DNA of 64,000 nucleotides from Mytilus californianus (taxonomy: Eukaryota): contig NW_026262679.1 in the NCBI RefSeq assembly GCF_021869535.1, positions 89,528,001-89,592,000 on the forward strand, read 5' to 3'. Shown here piece after piece: positions 12,729 to 60,295 of this stretch. The notes under the pieces were generated by a model. It saw only the letters and a list, made by a program, of their open reading frames with translations. It was not told the DNA's origin and searched no databases. The stretch's first letter is position 1; each line of letters starts with the position of its first letter. The translations under genes were made by a program, and so were the position numbers.

Positions 12729-13014
12729 TATAAATAAGAAGATGTGGTATGAGTGCCAATGAGACAACTCCAAGTCCAAGTCACAATGTGTAAAAAGTTA
12801 ACAATTATAGGTCAAATTACGGCCTTCAACACGGAGCCTTGGATCAGACCGAACAGCAAGCTATAAAGGGCCCCAAAATGACTAGTGTAAAACAATTCAA
12901 ACAGGAAAACCAACGGTCTAATCTATATAAAAAAAGAGAAACGAGAAACACTTATGAACCACATCAACAAACGACAACCACTGAACAACAGGTTCCTGAC
13001 TTAGGACAGGTGCA
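12729..13014 (-). mobile_element. Abundant mussel SINE-like repeat (3' part)
   Basis: Reverse complement of 21040-21326 (tgcacctgtcctaagtcaggaa ... gagttgtctcattggcactcataccacatcttctt). Confidence 0.8.
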
Positions 13015-13393
13015 AGTGCGCATTTCTGTGTTATTTTAATGAGGAACGAATCAGGAATGGCAAAAAAACAGTTAAAAGCCCGAGACAGCTTTGTTTTAGG
13101 GATTCCCCACCCCACCCCCCAAAAAATATCTGTTGAAATAAAAAAATACATATGGTGTGACTAACGCAGTGCGCAACACGTGCTACTTGAGTAACATTCA
13201 TTTTTTACGCTAGAGACACAAATTAAAACATAACAAAAATATAAGGTTTGATAGCATAAAAACTTTGACTGAGGGAGTATAAACCTTAGTTTTTGGCACA
13301 ATAACATAATCAATAAACTGCAACTTGGTATAGAAAAATATCAAAGCAGTTGATTTACACCTTTTATATTTTCTTCAGTCAATTTTGTCAATT

Positions 13394-14039
13394 CTAAAAG
13401 TTGTTGTAATAATGCCCGAGAGTCGAAAGATGGGGTCCACTCTCATCAAGAAGGCTGGCTGCTGGGAAAACCCAACCATCTCCATGTGTTCTGCTGACGA
13501 ACCAAGAGTAACGGTAGACATATGAAGCAGATTCAAGTCTAGGTAAAATAGCCTTCATGTAATTTAGTTGGTCGTTGACAGAGTTTTTTTGTGGACATGC
13601 AAATTCGGTAAGCCATATTTGTTTGTGGAATCTATCCCATAATTTTTTTAAGAAATTCATTGTAATGTCTGCATTACACCAATAGGCATGGGTGGCTATG
13701 TAATCAACTTGGCAACCATGACAAGCTGCAAAAAATTGCTCTAACCATACAACTGGATCTAGGTAACCACCTGGGGCAACGGCAGGGCTAACCAACTTTC
13801 TCCCGTGAGCAATCGATTCCAAAGATTTCCAGTGTCTTGCTGCATCTTGAGGTGACATATTTGCTTGTTGCCGAAAATTTGGTTCATTGAAACCCAGGAC
13901 ATAGTGAGTGTTGTGTTGTAAATGGACTGGTTCGTCAATATTATGCCGCCATGCCCAGACCATTGGCACATATCCTGATTTTACACTTGACGAACAGTGT
14001 TTTGTACTGTGTTGCCAAGGAGACTCGTGCCAATCATAC
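13394..14039 (-). CDS. GH128 endo-beta-1,3-glucanase (Asl1-like, Glyco_hydro_cc), coding exon 3 of 3
   Basis: Acceptor tttttag|G TAT GAT TGG. Contains WYDW, VPMVW, LGFNEPN (acid/base Glu), SPA, DYIATHAY, IWLTEF (nucleophile Glu) and YRYSWF; stop at 13394-13396. Confidence 0.93.
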
Positions 14040-16082
14040 CTAAAAAGATATAAAAATATTTTGCTTAAAACACGTGTTCACAGAAAATTTAATACGGAAA
14101 TGATGTATAAAAATATCATTACACTTTTTTATAAAAAAGCAAGCATTTTGGAGACAGTTCGTGCCATATGAATGTGGGTATACACACCTTTGGTTTTTAA
14201 AAATTGTATAGCGATTCCCACAAAATAGGGGCTAGTTCAATCGGATTTAAATTCAGATCTATCGGAGCTCGCGTGCTCATTATATAAGGATAGAGAAATC
14301 AGAGATCTATCTTCTAATTAGATTGTGGCTAGTTGATAGTCACTCTTTCTGACAATTTAAACAAAATATCCCATTGAAGTTACACGACAAGATTACTTTG
14401 GAAAATCTCAATGTGGAGAACGTTTGTGAGATACAGATGATGCCATTGTATCTCTTTTTTTAAATTTTCATTATTATCATAAATAGAAGGTCAACTATAT
14501 GTAGTAAGTAAGATATTTCTTATAATTAAAAAATATGTATGAATGAAAAATGATATTTAAAAAAGGGCGATATCTCCTGCAAAATATTTTCTACCAAACG
14601 ACCAAAGATCTGACCAAATATAAGTGGTATAAGGAGAAAAACCTTAGAGTTACTTTCATGAAAAATCATTATCTGAATAAATGTAATGTCAATAAATCAG
14701 CCAAAATTAAAAACATTAAAATGACAGGCTAATATGTTTACAGCACTCCATGACCAAACATTGACTTAAATTAGGACGTGAGTTGTTGAATTTAACGGGG
14801 TCTTCCGTCTACTGTGAAAGGTACTGTAGTCACATGTGTTCTTTAACTGGACTCATTGGCAATCAAACAGCATCTCCGTTTTTTGTTTTGTTTTTATAAA
14901 CATAGAAATATCTAAGAAGAGCTTAAGCGCCAAAATATACGAACATACCAGTGTCATTACATTCCCTTAACTAAGACACATTGGGGCAACAGTATGACTT
15001 GAAAGCACCTTCTTTTAACAATTAAAAAATAATAAAAGCAATATCCAACTTTTTTCTGCACTTGATGCACTCGGACAATGATTTCAAAGGTAGATATCCG
15101 TTTGCGCCAAAAATGCACTCTTTTGCCCTAGGATTCCATTGATACGTTTGCGCCACTAGTTTTCAAAATATTATATTCCGTTGCACCAAAATTATGTATA
15201 CGATTGTCCCTATTCTTGTACATAATCTTATTTCTATTTTTTTAATGACTCGCTATCCCCATTTTTTTTTAATCCTGGCTTAGTATAATCAGTTTACACT
15301 AAAGTAAAGGTCATTTAATAGCAGATTTTAAAAAGATGCAGATGTACTTTAATCAAGATGTTGTTTCCTTTTATCCATTATTTTCAACGAAGTGGGACTT
15401 AAATTAGAGTAGCAGGACAATGCATATATGAATAACACATACTAGTAGTTGATAGGAAGAAAAACCAGAGTGTTACCCTAAAAGGAAAATGGTCAACCGA
15501 GGGTGATATGTTTTTCTCGGGGTAACAATCTGCTTTATCGCCCTTTCACCGATGTTGATTTATTATTTATTTATTTATTTAATTTTTTATTGGTTAATGC
15601 AAGAGGGTGACATTTTAAAAAGTGTTACTGCCATTGGGTTAAATTCGTATTAACCAACAATTAAAAAACTGTTTAACATAAAGTATAAGTATTGTTCATT
15701 TCAAGTGAAACAATGTATTCCAAAATAATTTAAAAACCAGTGGAATATTCTAGAAAATCAGGCAAAACTATTATTGTTTTCCAATACCCAATATATTTTA
15801 ATCCCTTAACTTTTTGATATTGCAAATTATATTCAATCTGGTGCTTTTCTCAATAATTTATTTTCTTATATTTTTCTTATATTGGGTGGGGTCTTACATA
15901 CAAACTACAGTAACTGTAAGTGTAGAATTTCCCTTAGATTTATTGGAGATCCACCTTGGCATTTGCATCTTAACAGTTGTCATTTTAATACTGCTCGAGA
16001 CATTAGAATAACAATTAAGATATTTTAAACATAATATAGAAAAAAATATCGGAACTTTTCTCAAACACTAAAAGTCACTTAC

Positions 16083-16215
16083 CACCAGTGGATATTAGTA
16101 AGGGCATCTTCATCTCCACAATGGTAACTGTGTCCGCCATTTATGGCAACTCCCTTTTTGGTGGAAGCTTCACAAAGACTCAAAATTACCAGCAAGCAAA
16201 AGGTGTAAAGTATTC
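16083..16215 (-). CDS. GH128 glucanase, coding exon 2 (signal peptide and KKG motif)
   Basis: cttttaatag|GA ... CAC TGG TG|gtaagt encodes ILYTFCLLVILSLCEASTKKGVAINGGHSYHCGDEDALTNIHW. The phase-2 junction completes WWYDW with exon 3. Confidence 0.9.
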
Positions 16216-16825
16216 CTATTAAAAGGTAAAATGTTGGGCATTTATTGGAAAAGAGCTAAACAACGTAACACTAGTATTATCGAGGATCGACATCGTATTT
16301 ACCCACCTTCCCTTCTAAAACATGTTCAGAAACAGATCTAGAAAATCAAGGATCATAACTCTTAAACGTGAATGTGAGGCGGCAAAAAAAAAAAGGATTT
16401 TGTGAAGTATTTAAATAATCATTCAAAATTCTGAAGAAAAAAAATAATCGGGTAATCAGGAACAATGCTTCTTATAGTAAATCAAACGACAGAGGCAAAC
16501 TACGAAACATGAGGACTCTACGACTGTAGGAATTACGACTAAAACATTCTTTCAAGAACTCTTTCAGAGTCCCATAAGTGGCCCTTTCCAAGTTAAATGT
16601 TTCGTCCTGATTATAATTGAAATATTTGATTTGAGAAAGGGACAATCAATTAATTCCTTTTAATTCACTTACGTGTATTGGAAGACGTGTTTTCAAGAAA
16701 CCAAAGAAACTATAATTATGAATAAACAAATCATAATTGTATTTGTTGTGATATTTTATAATTTTTGTTTTTTGTTTTTTTTTACCTTGCAGTGTATTGA
16801 TTATTTGAAGTAAATGTACACTCAC

Positions 16826-16829
16826 CCAT
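16826..16829 (-). CDS. GH128 glucanase, coding part of exon 1 (ATG G)
   Basis: Minus strand aaacATGG|gtgagt, a strong donor whose phase 1 matches exon 2. Total CDS is 783 nt = 260 aa plus stop. Confidence 0.7.
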
Positions 16830-16904
16830 GTTTTGGTATTACAAATCCTGTCGTAAGAAGACACTGATCTTGTACCTTACTATTGTACTTAACTCTGCTT
16901 TTCA

Positions 16905-16911
16905 TTTTATA
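16905..16911 (-). promoter_or_regulatory. Candidate TATA box of the GH128 gene
   Basis: TATAAAA on the minus strand ~80 nt upstream of the ATG; weak evidence in AT-rich DNA. Confidence 0.3.
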
Positions 16912-18065
16912 TGGACTGGCTGTCTTTATCTCTTAAAGATAACCTAGGAGTTAATTTCAAGGATGCCAAGTTTTACTATATGTTTCGATTATGACACCGA
17001 TCCCAAATGAATTGACCTGGAAGACCTGGTCCAGTTCATTTAAGGCATAGTCTATGTAATTGGGTGATACTTCGGATTTTGATGAAATTATGTATGCATT
17101 TAAATCTCGTTAACCCTGTGTATCATATCCACTGGATATAGGTACACTTGGCCTGGTTCTCTGTTCATTGTCTAAGAAAAACAACATTACAGTACAAATA
17201 CCAGCGTATAGCTACCTGGGTACCTATATGTTGGTATATGAACAGTAATGTAGTTATTGTTTAAACTGCATCTGAATGTCGAAAAAAATATTCCTATAGC
17301 GTTTATACTTTGCAATGATACAGTCAATTGAAAATGTGATAAAGCTCTATAAATGTATAGAATGTATGTAAAAAACATCGAAAAATGTGCATTTTTTTCA
17401 ATTTAAATTGGAATTCTTCGTAATTTATATGTTATTGCTGTTAACATTATCGTTTTGACAATAAGAAAATATAAGGGGGTCACCGGATTCGTTTTTGCTG
17501 TATATACGTATTGTATGAAAAACATGAAAAAATACAATTGTCTATAATGTGGTTTTGATCCTATTTTCACGGTACATATCGAGGCTTATGGATTCTGCTG
17601 ACTTAGAACGTTTTAATAGCTTTAGTTTTGTATTAAAAAAACACCCTATTTGACCTGACCTGGCATTAACATTGAAAGGTCGTTGGACTTTTTATCTGCA
17701 CTCAGTTAACGCCAGTTATTACCTGTTCAGGTAATACAAATCTGGATAATTTCACGCAAGAATTCAAAGGCTAAATTATAGTATAGGTTTTAGAGATTTG
17801 TCATTCGAGGTTCGCCTTTCCGACAGTACAGTATCGTTTCCCACCCACCCACCCATTACTCCAGAAGAAAGTTCATGTTATGTAGTAAATAGTATATGAT
17901 GAAAAGATTTTGTTGTTAAATTTATAGAATACTTCTTCTATTGTAGATGGTGTTTAAAATTACAACATACGGATTTAACCAATAGACATATGTCTATACA
18001 ATATTTCGACTCTTTTAATTCTGAAAAGAGTCTTATAAAATTGTGAGTAAATCTGTCACAGAATA

Positions 18066-59512: not shown

Positions 59513-60295
59513 ATGAGGCCCAAACTTTCCAACACGATGAAGGAGCGTAGGCTGTCTGCTTCACTCTCCCTAGAGAATCTTATTATGGATTTTGAAAACC
59601 CGTTCACCCCTATTCAGAAGAACTACAATAATGCTATTCTACGACAATCTCATGCCAAACAATTGTTGGTTGGTGTTACATCATTTGAGATATATCGTAA
59701 CAGAGTACCAAAGAAAGTGAAATTATTGGATGTCAAGTTATCATTCTCATACCAAGATAACTACCAAACTGAAACAGATCTGTTGGAGAAAGAACTTGTC
59801 CGTAAAGGCAAGAAATGGAATTGGCCATTACAAAAGGGACAGAATCACATTATAACATTCCCATATGCTCCTGGGGATCGTGTCAATCTAAATTTTGGCA
59901 TGACTGTATTTAAGACAAAGAAAATGAGCGTGTTTAGCTCTGAGACTTTAACATCACCTGTGGGAAATGTTACTGACTGTTTTGTCCTCGCCAAAAATAA
60001 TGGAGTTGGAATTGGACTTCCAATCGACACTGTGATCACAAATCATGTTAGACTGAACTTCAGTTTAGATGGTTATGCTCATCACATGACCATCAAACTA
60101 AAACTTGGTTTGATTGAAGAAAGTAGCGGAAATCCATCACTGTGGCTGCGACCAATCTCTATAGACAAACCTTTCAGAAGTTCACAGACTTTATTGGAAA
60201 TGTTAGGTGATCCAACTACCTTTCCTCCAATGTCAAAAGGCAGTGCAGAAGAATTGGTGAAACACAGAAGCTTTATAGCCAGCTCACAGAAGTAA
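59513..60295 (+). CDS. Uncharacterised 260-aa protein, beta-rich (possibly C2-like fold)
   Basis: 783-nt stop-free ORF in AT-rich DNA. It is preceded by an acceptor (ttttcttttgtag|, exon from 59487) and an in-frame TAA directly before the ATG. No family was recognised with confidence. Confidence 0.75.
   Translation: MRPKLSNTMKERRLSASLSLENLIMDFENPFTPIQKNYNNAILRQSHAKQLLVGVTSFEIYRNRVPKKVKLLDVKLSFSYQDNYQTETDLLEKELVRKGKKWNWPLQKGQNHIITFPYAPGDRVNLNFGMTVFKTKKMSVFSSETLTSPVGNVTDCFVLAKNNGVGIGLPIDTVITNHVRLNFSLDGYAHHMTIKLKLGLIEESSGNPSLWLRPISIDKPFRSSQTLLEMLGDPTTFPPMSKGSAEELVKHRSFIASSQK

What the first reader, a model, noticed from the sequence alone, without database searches (positions are those of the whole stretch)
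13394..16829. Intron-containing secreted GH128 beta-1,3-glucanase in a bivalve
Seen: three coding exons with canonical, phase-matched splice sites (16829-16826, 16215-16083, 14039-13394) give a 260-aa protein. It has a signal peptide, KKG, WWYDW, VPMVW and both catalytic glutamates (FNEP, WLTEF), and is unusually His-rich (18 of 260). Known: GH128 (clan GH-A) has been characterised in fungi and bacteria as beta-1,3-glucanases, whereas studied mollusc laminarinases are mostly GH16. Inferred: an endogenous enzyme for digesting algal laminarin/chrysolaminarin or for antifungal defence. It may be an old horizontal acquisition or a patchily retained gene; the introns and mussel repeats argue against contamination.
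Basis: partly seen in the sequence, partly recalled or inferred. Interest (0 to 1): 0.72.

Follow-up and report, generated by a model that had tools for sequence, protein, structure and literature searches.

The report
Mussel secreted GH128 beta-1,3-glucanase gene
This is a real, spliced and transcribed mussel gene for a small secreted enzyme of the GH128 family, probably a beta-1,3-glucan (laminarin) cutter; databases already predict it, and it belongs to a large, old, unstudied animal branch of a family so far characterised only in bacteria and fungi.

Summary
On the minus strand, ATGG (16829-16826), 16215-16083 and 14039-13394 join through GT..AG introns into a 783-nt frame of 260 aa. Transcript-like contigs from two related mussel species carry exactly these two junctions; a DNA run does not. 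The protein matches Pfam PF11790 (GH128) at E 2.8e-51. Its predicted fold (pLDDT 95) is closest to bacterial subgroup II endo-beta-1,3-glucanases. Both catalytic glutamates and the -1 subsite are conserved. It is 6.9% histidine, but only H163 is conserved.

- RefSeq already carries the same 260-aa model in three Mytilus species, as "uncharacterized protein".
- Dozens of homologues are annotated in bivalves, gastropods, an annelid, a brachiopod and a brittle star.
- Animal sequences, plus an unnamed plankton cDNA group, sit on one side of a branch (bootstrap 100) from the nearest bacteria.
- Mussel, abalone, annelid and brittle star share the phase-2 intron inside WWYDW.

So the gene is old in animals, not a recent transfer or contamination. 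Whether it first came from bacteria is open, because the tree has no root. Activity and tissue are untested. I found no paper on animal GH128. This scan's earlier notes hold nothing on it.

The parts
16826..16915 (-). Exon carrying 5'UTR and the start codon. The coding part is only ATGG (16829-16826). An out-of-frame upstream ATG lies at 16905-16903.
   Evidence: Transcript-like contigs X1 and X2 lie on 16825-16915. Sequence read. Beyond 16915 the contigs continue 142-156 nt that do not align at 92% or better. Their first ~15 letters match window 16923-16937 with a small indel, so the true 5' end is unresolved.
16216..16825 (-). Intron 1 (610 nt, phase 1, GT..AG)
   Evidence: The joint 16214->16825 (cut +1) is present in the X1 and X2 contigs and absent from DNA run X18. 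Splice motifs read.
16083..16215 (-). Coding exon 2 (133 nt): signal peptide, the KKG strand, first Cys, up to the split second W of WWYDW
14040..16082 (-). Intron 2 (2043 nt, phase 2, GT..AG). It holds high-copy mussel repeats.
   Evidence: The joint 14036->16080 (cut +3) is present in X1 and X2 and absent from X18. DNA depth peaks at 14223-14369 and 15399-15545. The same intron position and phase occur in Haliotis, Owenia and Amphiura.
13394..14039 (-). Coding exon 3 (646 nt including stop TAG 13396-13394): most of the GH128 barrel, with N97-E98 (acid/base), H163, Y165 and E191 (nucleophile)
13168..13393 (-). 3'UTR, minimum extent. The X1 contig runs on to about 12965, into a high-copy repeat. 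An ATTAAA lies at about 13040-13035.
   Evidence: Contigs cannot show the true end.

Best explanation
An endogenous, transcribed Mytilus gene with three coding exons encodes a 260-aa secreted single-domain glycoside hydrolase of family GH128 (clan GH-A, (beta/alpha)8 barrel).

Proposed mechanism:
- After signal-peptide removal (about residue 18) the mature enzyme most likely hydrolyses beta-1,3-glucans by the retaining double-displacement mechanism of GH128.
- E98 (in FNEPN) acts as acid/base and E191 (in WLTEF) as nucleophile. H163, Y165 and N97 assist.
- W74 and W45/W46 line the negative subsites.

Likely role:
- Digestion of storage glucans (laminarin, chrysolaminarin) of the phytoplankton that mussels filter.
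- It would act alongside the known GH16 laminarinases.

Wider picture:
- The gene is one of at least eight Mytilus paralogues.
- These belong to an old animal GH128 clade present in molluscs, an annelid, a brachiopod and a brittle star.

Shown: the gene model, splicing, transcription, family, fold, conserved catalytic residues, and the single animal branch with a shared intron.
Inferred: secretion, substrate, endo or exo mode, physiological role.
For: - Gene model and motifs.
- Both junctions sit in transcript-like contigs of two runs and not in DNA.
- PF11790 at E 2.8e-51.
- Best solved relatives are the CBM6E GH128 domain (8j3x, E 8e-32), ScGH128_II (6uax, 1e-30) and PvGH128_II (6uav/6uaw, 6e-25).
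- AF2 model of the 98%-identical M. trossulus orthologue: pLDDT 95.2, pTM 0.90.
- The 28 best Foldseek matches are all GH128 structures, subgroup II first, with TM 0.72-0.78.
- Mussel residues aligned to CBM6E residues named in PMC10956234:
  - N97/E98 = N167/E168
  - Q104 = Q174
  - W74 = W141
  - H163 and Y165 = H245 and Y247
  - E191 = E272
  - the F after W225 = F310
- These columns are invariant or at least 90% conserved across 96 homologues.
- Six Cys of the mature protein are conserved in animal homologues, which fits a secreted protein.
- Digestive-gland laminarinase activity exists in Mytilus californianus and rises with food supply (PMC5051655).
- IQ-TREE places animals plus a plankton cDNA group on one side of a branch at 100/99.
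- The phase-2 intron is shared in four species of three phyla.
Against: - No enzymology exists for any animal GH128 that I could find.
- Positive-subsite residues of subgroup II are only partly kept. CBM6E N206/Y207 fall in a gap, Y250 aligns to A169, W256 to F175, D277 to Q196 and M248 to W166. Endo mode and preferred substrate are therefore open.
- The RNA-Seq raw reads of the window's own species (X21, about 6% of the run read) gave no read on the gene. Expression is tissue- or condition-limited, or low there.
- The tissues of the expressing runs are coded and unknown.
- No signal-peptide predictor was available.
- Paralogues fused to C-type lectin or Sushi/EGF domains hint that part of the family works in recognition rather than digestion.
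Confidence: 0.75

Rival explanations
1. It is the same enzyme, but its main job is defence: degrading or sensing beta-1,3-glucan of fungal or oomycete cell walls in haemolymph or mucus.
For: - The family is strongly expanded in bivalves (at least 8 Mytilus, 7 or more Mercenaria and 8 or more Ruditapes proteins). Large expansions are typical of bivalve immune gene families; this is general knowledge, not tested here.
- Paralogues are fused to C-type lectin (P0174) and Sushi+EGF (P0194) domains.
- The gene is silent in one whole RNA run of the species, as an inducible gene might be.
Against: - This copy has no recognition domain.
- Digestive enzymes are also expanded in filter feeders.
- Mussels have measurable digestive laminarinase activity that needs genes.
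- No challenge-expression data are at hand.
Confidence: 0.25
2. It is a GH128-fold protein acting on a substrate other than linear beta-1,3-glucan, such as mixed-linkage or branched glucans or an endogenous glycan. Alternatively it acts as an exo-enzyme or transglycosylase.
For: - The positive-subsite residues differ from subgroup II enzymes.
- The animal clade is separated from bacteria by a long branch of 0.47.
- GH128 subgroups differ in mode: endo, exo or binding only (titles).
Against: - All characterised GH128 members listed act on or bind beta-1,3-glucans.
- The -1 and negative subsites are conserved.
Confidence: 0.12
3. It is a non-catalytic glucan-binding protein, like the GH128 subgroup VII oligosaccharide-binding proteins.
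For: Subgroup VII shows that the fold can lose catalysis (6ubd and 6ubc). The unusual histidine content is unexplained.
Against: - Both glutamates, the His-x-Tyr pair and N97 are intact, and conserved across 96 homologues.
- Subgroup VII structures are among the most distant matches (E 4e-07 and 1.5e-05).
Confidence: 0.04
4. It is bacterial contamination, or a recent bacterium-to-bivalve transfer.
For: The nearest non-animal named relatives are bacterial (Myxococcota and Bacteroidota, 35-42% identity).
Against: - It has two spliceosomal introns, confirmed by transcripts, with mussel high-copy repeats inside them.
- Orthologues lie on chromosome-scale contigs of several Mytilus species.
- No named bacterial sequence lies on the animal side of the tree.
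- An intron is shared with an annelid and an echinoderm.
Confidence: 0.01

Closest known systems
GH128 subgroup II endo-beta-1,3-glucanases: CBM6E of Saccharophagus degradans (8j3x), ScGH128_II of Sorangium cellulosum (6uax), PvGH128_II of Pseudomonas viridiflava (6uav/6uaw)
   Same: - Best sequence matches (E 8e-32 to 6e-25) and best structure matches (TM 0.72-0.78, 32-34% identity).
- Same catalytic Glu pair, His-x-Tyr, Asn, and Trp platform of the negative subsites.
   Different: - The mussel gene is animal, intron-containing, single-domain and 260 aa. The bacterial relatives sit in ORFs of 269-858 aa, often with extra modules.
- The positive-subsite residues are only partly conserved.
- The mussel protein is His-rich and has an extra animal-specific Cys pair, C34 and C61.
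Fungal GH128 (subgroups III-VII, e.g. Lentinula edodes GLU1/LeGH128_IV; 'Asl1-like' proteins)
   Same: Same Pfam family and fold. Database names for the animal proteins ('Asl1-like', 'alkali-sensitive linkage protein 1-like') derive from these.
   Different: Much more distant: E 4e-18 to 1.5e-05, 21-27% identity in the structural alignment. The animal clade resembles bacterial subgroup II more than any fungal subgroup.
Mollusc GH16 endo-1,3-beta-glucanases (scallop Lcf, Mizuhopecten, Perna viridis crystalline-style enzyme)
   Same: Same presumed substrate and physiological setting: laminarin digestion in bivalve digestive organs (PMC7551256).
   Different: An unrelated fold and family. GH16 is a beta-jelly roll and GH128 a (beta/alpha)8 barrel (general CAZy knowledge). 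The GH16 enzymes are biochemically characterised; no animal GH128 is.
RefSeq/UniProt predictions of this very gene: XP_071168932.1 (M. edulis), XP_063431566.1 (M. trossulus), VDI07908.1 (M. galloprovincialis)
   Same: Same 260-aa model, 252-254 of 260 residues identical.
   Different: They are labelled only 'uncharacterized protein' or 'Asl1-like glycosyl hydrolase catalytic domain-containing protein'. No function or publication is attached.

Membership tests
GH128 / Pfam PF11790 Glyco_hydro_cc | Sequence match above the curated family threshold | tested here: met
   174.8 bits against a cut-off of 21, E 2.8e-51, covering profile positions 24-237 of 237 with the exon-3 piece alone
GH128 / Pfam PF11790 Glyco_hydro_cc | (beta/alpha)8-type barrel closest to solved GH128 structures | tested here: met
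   AF2 model of the 98%-identical orthologue has pLDDT 95.2. Foldseek ranks 1-28 are all GH128 entries with TM 0.70-0.78. Other clan GH-A families follow only from E 3e-06.
GH128 / Pfam PF11790 Glyco_hydro_cc | Catalytic acid/base Glu in the N-E-P motif (E168 of CBM6E) | tested here: met
   E98 aligns to it. 8j3y is the E168Q mutant at this column. E98 is at least 90% conserved in 96 homologues.
GH128 / Pfam PF11790 Glyco_hydro_cc | Nucleophile Glu in the T-E-(F/W) motif (E272 of CBM6E) | tested here: met
   E191 aligns to it and is invariant in 96 homologues.
GH128 / Pfam PF11790 Glyco_hydro_cc | -1 and negative-subsite residues: His-x-Tyr (H245/Y247), Asn before the acid/base, Trp platform (W141), Gln (Q174) | tested here: met
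   H163, Y165, N97, W74 and Q104 align to them. H163 is invariant and the others at least 90% conserved, except W74, which is invariant in the 14-sequence alignment.
GH128 / Pfam PF11790 Glyco_hydro_cc | Hydrolysis of beta-1,3-glucan | not testable with these tools
   Needs recombinant enzyme assays.
GH128 subgroup II (bacterial endo-beta-1,3-glucanases) | Closest to subgroup II in sequence and structure | tested here: met
   Top hits are CBM6E, ScGH128_II and PvGH128_II. PMC10956234 places CBM6E in subgroup II.
GH128 subgroup II (bacterial endo-beta-1,3-glucanases) | Positive-subsite residues (CBM6E N206/Y207, M248, Y250, W256, D277) | tested here: inconclusive
   N206/Y207 lie in an insertion absent from the mussel protein. 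M248 aligns to W166, Y250 to A169, W256 to F175 and D277 to Q196 (alignment, numbering). In the tree the animal clade is separate from the bacterial clade.
Secreted protein | Cleavable N-terminal signal peptide | tested here: inconclusive
   - No predictor was available.
- By inspection there is a hydrophobic core at residues 3-15, and C-E-A before S19 fits the -3/-1 rule.
- AF2 gives a detached N-terminal helix at residues 2-15 with lower pLDDT.
- Homologues all start with a similar hydrophobic segment before S-x-KKG.
Recent horizontally transferred gene | Nested within a donor clade, lacking host-type introns, restricted to one host lineage | tested here: not met
   - Animal sequences are one side of a 100/99 branch, away from all named bacteria.
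- The gene has two introns, one shared across three phyla.
- Homologues exist in four animal phyla.

The most novel reading that the evidence does not exclude
Animal GH128 genes descend from a single ancient capture of a bacterial subgroup-II-type endo-beta-1,3-glucanase, before the protostome-deuterostome split. They were then lost in most phyla and multiplied in filter-feeding molluscs. They now form a second, entirely unstudied family of animal laminarinases next to GH16. A sister group is abundant in ocean eukaryote metatranscriptomes, which would make them a real term in marine laminarin turnover.
Probability: 0.3. Interest if true: 0.6.

Novelty: new member of a known kind. Interest (0 to 1): 0.4.

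Why it matters
- Laminarin and chrysolaminarin are the main storage glucans of diatoms and brown algae, which mussels filter. Mollusc laminarinases studied so far are GH16.
- A second enzyme family is now visible. It is expressed, catalytically intact, expanded in bivalves, and present in several marine invertebrate phyla and in plankton transcript catalogues.
- It would change which genes are credited with digestive laminarinase activity in these animals.
- It would give CAZy's GH128 its first animal members to characterise.
- It also offers a clean case for asking whether an animal carbohydrase family began as a bacterial gene.
- As a single gene it is ordinary: it is already predicted in RefSeq and its fold and catalytic machinery are textbook GH128.

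Tried and rejected
1. Further GH128 copies in the window: tblastn found none beyond the three exons.
2. An upstream non-coding exon:
   - The 30-letter loose end of the transcript contigs behind 16915 has no match in the window at up to 3 mismatches.
   - A local alignment shows its first ~15 letters match 16923-16937.
   - The break is therefore probably species divergence or an indel, perhaps with an acceptor near 16944. It stays unresolved.
3. Raw RNA reads of the window's own species (X21): no read on the gene in the 6% of the run that was read. I have no strand, end or level information.
4. Naming the plankton cDNA group nested among animals: a search with P0213 found about 60 close relatives. 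All came from JGI/MERC/ENA marine samples and none was named. The closest named proteins were molluscs at 39% or less.
5. A shared intron in that group:
   - Tara metagenome contigs L090 and L092 show several very short introns.
   - L092 has none at the WWYDW position.
   - L090 has one a few codons upstream, which is not the same position.
6. Rooting the tree with fungal GH128: no tool gave me fungal sequences as ids, so the tree is unrooted. 'Closer to bacteria than to fungi' rests on PDB E-values and Foldseek ranks only.
7. Santos et al. 2020, the GH128 subgroup paper, is not held. Subgroup labels come from the PDB titles and PMC10956234.
8. Histidine richness as a conserved metal site: rejected. 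Only H163 is conserved, and the other 17 His lie at positions with 3-25% His in homologues.
9. Absence from cnidarians, arthropods, vertebrates, oysters and scallops: none appeared among the best 120 hits of three searches. The lists are truncated, so this is not proof of absence.
Full report

Yes. Reading the minus strand:
- AAAACATGG at 16829-16826 is followed by the donor GTGAGT.
- The acceptor TTTTAATAG ends at 16216.
- The exon 16215-16083 ends ...CACTGGTG and is followed by GTAAGT.
- The acceptor TCTTTTTAG ends at 14040.
- The last exon runs from 14039 to TAG at 13396-13394.

Joined in a script, this gives 783 nt and a 260-aa protein:
- Residues 3-15 are hydrophobic and precede STKKG.
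- The motifs WWYDW, VPMVW, FNEPN and WLTEF are present.
- It has 18 His and 8 Cys.
- Intron phases are 1 and 2.

Chance is excluded. The 64-kb window has 32% G+C and only five ORFs of 130 aa or more. The exon-3 translation alone matches Pfam PF11790 at E 2.8e-51.

**2. Is it spliced and expressed?**

Public runs were laid on 12900-17300.
- Contigs of X1 and X2 (two organism codes other than the best DNA holder) carry the joints 14036->16080 (cut +3) and 16214->16825 (cut +1). Both read CT..AC on the + strand, exactly the predicted junctions.
- One X2 contig of 1215 nt spans exon 3, exon 2 and 16825-16915.
- The DNA run X18 covers both introns and shows neither joint.
- X1's word depth over the exons is in the thousands, so some sample expresses the gene strongly. 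The tissue is coded and unknown.
- The raw RNA-Seq run of the window's own species label (X21, about 6% read) has no read on the gene.
- DNA depth peaks of 8,000-45,000 inside intron 2 and in both flanks show mussel high-copy repeats around and within the gene.

The exon that holds the ATG extends at least to 16915 as 5'UTR.
- The contigs go on 142-156 nt further with letters that do not align at 92%.
- Their first ~15 letters match 16923-16937, so the 5' end is unresolved.
- An out-of-frame upstream ATG lies at 16905. The odd N-terminus of the M. coruscus database protein P0126 matches the translation of that upstream frame by eye, so it is probably a mis-annotation.

**3. What is the protein?**

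- The best solved relatives are the GH128 domain of CBM6E (8j3x, E 8e-32), ScGH128_II (6uax, 1e-30) and PvGH128_II (6uav/6uaw, about 6e-25). Next come subgroup I (about 1e-20) and the fungal subgroups (4e-18 to 1.5e-05).
- An AlphaFold2 model of the 98%-identical M. trossulus orthologue, built on 96 homologues, has pLDDT 95.2 and pTM 0.90, with alternating strands and helices.
- Its 28 best Foldseek matches in the PDB are all GH128 entries. Subgroup II endo-beta-1,3-glucanases come first, with TM 0.72-0.78.

I used the residue roles given for CBM6E in PMC10956234 and the alignment. PDB chain numbering is the natural numbering minus 81.

| Mussel | CBM6E | Role |
|---|---|---|
| N97 | N167 | -1 subsite |
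| E98 | E168 | acid/base |
| Q104 | Q174 | -2 subsite |
| W74 | W141 | -4 to -2 platform |
| H163 | H245 | -1 subsite |
| Y165 | Y247 | nucleophile-activating |
| E191 | E272 | nucleophile |
| F after W225 | F310 | stacks at -1 |

- In a 96-sequence alignment H163, T190 and E191 are invariant. N97, E98, Q104, Y165 and W45 are at least 90% conserved.
- The positive subsites differ. N206/Y207 fall in a segment the mussel lacks, Y250 aligns to A169, W256 to F175, D277 to Q196 and M248 to W166.
- The catalytic centre is therefore intact, but endo or exo mode and fine specificity cannot be read off.

Histidine and cysteine:
- The histidine richness is real: 6.9% against a median of 2.6% in all homologues and 4.3% in named animal ones.
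- Several other bivalve copies share it. Only H163 is conserved, so it is not a conserved metal site.
- C152 and C155 are invariant. C167 and C194 are 88% conserved overall (96% in animals). C34 and C61 are universal in animals. This fits a disulfide-bonded secreted protein.

**4. How unusual is it?**

- The 90%-identity cluster around the best hit holds the same 260-aa model from RefSeq or GenBank for M. edulis, M. trossulus and M. galloprovincialis. They are 252-254 of 260 identical to the window's model and named only 'uncharacterized protein' or 'Asl1-like glycosyl hydrolase catalytic domain-containing protein'.
- Word searches list many further homologues:
  - bivalves: at least 8 Mytilus paralogues, plus Dreissena, Ruditapes, Mercenaria, Mactra, Mya, Potamilus and Sinanodonta;
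  - gastropods: Haliotis, Littorina, Batillaria, Babylonia, Lottia and Patella;
  - the annelid Owenia, the brachiopod Lingula and the brittle star Amphiura.
- Some copies are fused to C-type lectin or Sushi/EGF domains.
- Amphiura and Lingula have tandem arrays.
My FastTree tree places the window's protein next to the M. coruscus orthologue, which I take as compatible. I did not verify the species.

**5. Origin**

The nearest named non-animal relatives are Myxococcota and Bacteroidota proteins at 35-42% identity.

An IQ-TREE analysis used LG+C20 PMSF on 95 rows and 268 columns.
- Rows left out: all sequences under 200 aa, most near-duplicates, two thirds of the bacterial loci and Lingula's long branch.
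- The 45 named animal sequences plus 10 unnamed plankton sequences fall on one side of a branch with support 100/99.
- The 35 rows of the bacterial side (named bacterial loci and unnamed metagenome proteins that fell among them) form their own group at 100/98.
- The eight Mytilus paralogues form one clade at 100/99.

Exact spliced mapping of four annotated proteins on their loci gave these results.
- The phase-2 intron inside the second W of WWYDW is at the same codon and phase in Mytilus, Haliotis, Owenia and Amphiura.
- Haliotis and Owenia share a further phase-2 intron.
- So the gene was already intron-bearing in the common ancestor of these lineages. If Amphiura's copies are vertically inherited, that is before the protostome-deuterostome split.
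- Recent transfer into bivalves and contamination are excluded.

Whether the animal clade began as a bacterial gene or descends from an older eukaryotic one is open.
- The tree is unrooted and I could not add fungal sequences.
- The only pointer is that bacterial subgroup II is clearly closer than any fungal subgroup in sequence and structure.

The unnamed group nested among the animals is eukaryotic.
- Its cDNA contigs carry a SMART-type 5' end and a poly(A) start. They come from JGI marine metatranscriptomes and the 'merc' source, which I take from memory to be the MERC marine eukaryote catalogue.
- Tara metagenome contigs of this group show very short introns at other positions.
- Its organism is unknown.

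**6. Mechanism and role**

- Most likely this is a secreted retaining beta-1,3-glucanase.
- Mussels have digestive-gland laminarinase activity that rises with food supply (PMC5051655).
- The mollusc laminarinases characterised so far are GH16 (PMC7551256).
- A digestive role for this GH128 is therefore plausible but untested.
- A defence role against fungal or oomycete glucan is the main rival.

**7. Literature**

- 139 held papers mention GH128. The 40 best-ranked concern fungi or bacteria, apart from two unrelated word matches.
- The 8 papers that also contain 'metazoa' are not about animal enzymes.
- Searches for PF11790, Glyco_hydro_cc and Asl1-like found nothing on animals.
- The library lacks most subscription journals, so this is not proof that nothing exists.
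- This scan's earlier notes contain nothing on GH128.

**8. Verdict**

This is a new, uncharacterised animal member of a known enzyme family, already predicted in databases. Interest is moderate. It lies in the family-level picture (an old, expanded animal clade that has not been studied) rather than in this single gene.

Noticed in passing
window 16903-16905 (minus strand), running into exon 2: An upstream ATG sits in the 5'UTR, out of frame with the main ATG. It opens a short ORF that overlaps the start codon and ends in exon 2. The M. coruscus database protein P0126 (273 aa) has an N-terminus that matches this upstream frame, so it is probably a mis-annotation.
   Followed up: partly
window 2134-3315 (+): A 393-aa uninterrupted ORF has a weak rhodopsin-type 7TM match (PF00001, E 8.7e-06, 25.8 bits, below the 30.5 cut-off). 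It is a possible intronless GPCR gene.
   Followed up: no
window 59513-60295 (+): A 260-aa ORF with no Pfam match, one of only five ORFs of 130 aa or more in the window.
   Followed up: no
window 12900-13046, 14223-14369, 15399-15545, 17016-17300: Very high DNA word depth (thousands to millions) in the genome's own DNA run marks high-copy interspersed repeats in the 3' flank, in intron 2 and upstream of the gene. The repeat at 12900-13046 is also abundantly transcribed in the species' RNA run X21.
   Followed up: no
L085, L086 (JGI marine metatranscriptome contigs); L090, L092 (Tara metagenome contigs); proteins P0213, P0177, P0227-P0257: A large, diverse GH128 group (55-81% identical to each other) occurs in ocean eukaryote transcript catalogues. 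In the tree it nests among the animal sequences, but it has no named relative above 39% identity. Some members carry PAN domains. The genomic contigs show several very short introns. The organism is unknown.
   Followed up: partly
P0174 (M. trossulus), P0194 (Owenia fusiformis): GH128 catalytic domains are fused to a C-type lectin domain in P0174 and to Sushi plus EGF domains in P0194. This hints that part of the animal family works in glycan recognition.
   Followed up: partly
L001 (Amphiura filiformis), L004 (Lingula anatina): Tandem arrays of GH128 genes: two within 14 kb in the brittle star and three within 10 kb in the brachiopod. The Lingula model P0063 looks truncated at its N-terminus.
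   Followed up: no
L087 (Tara metagenome contig, protein P0211): An intron-less GH128 gene lies on an AT-rich contig with TA/TG microsatellites. In the tree it branches between the animal side and the bacterial clade. It may belong to a protist lineage of the family.
   Followed up: no
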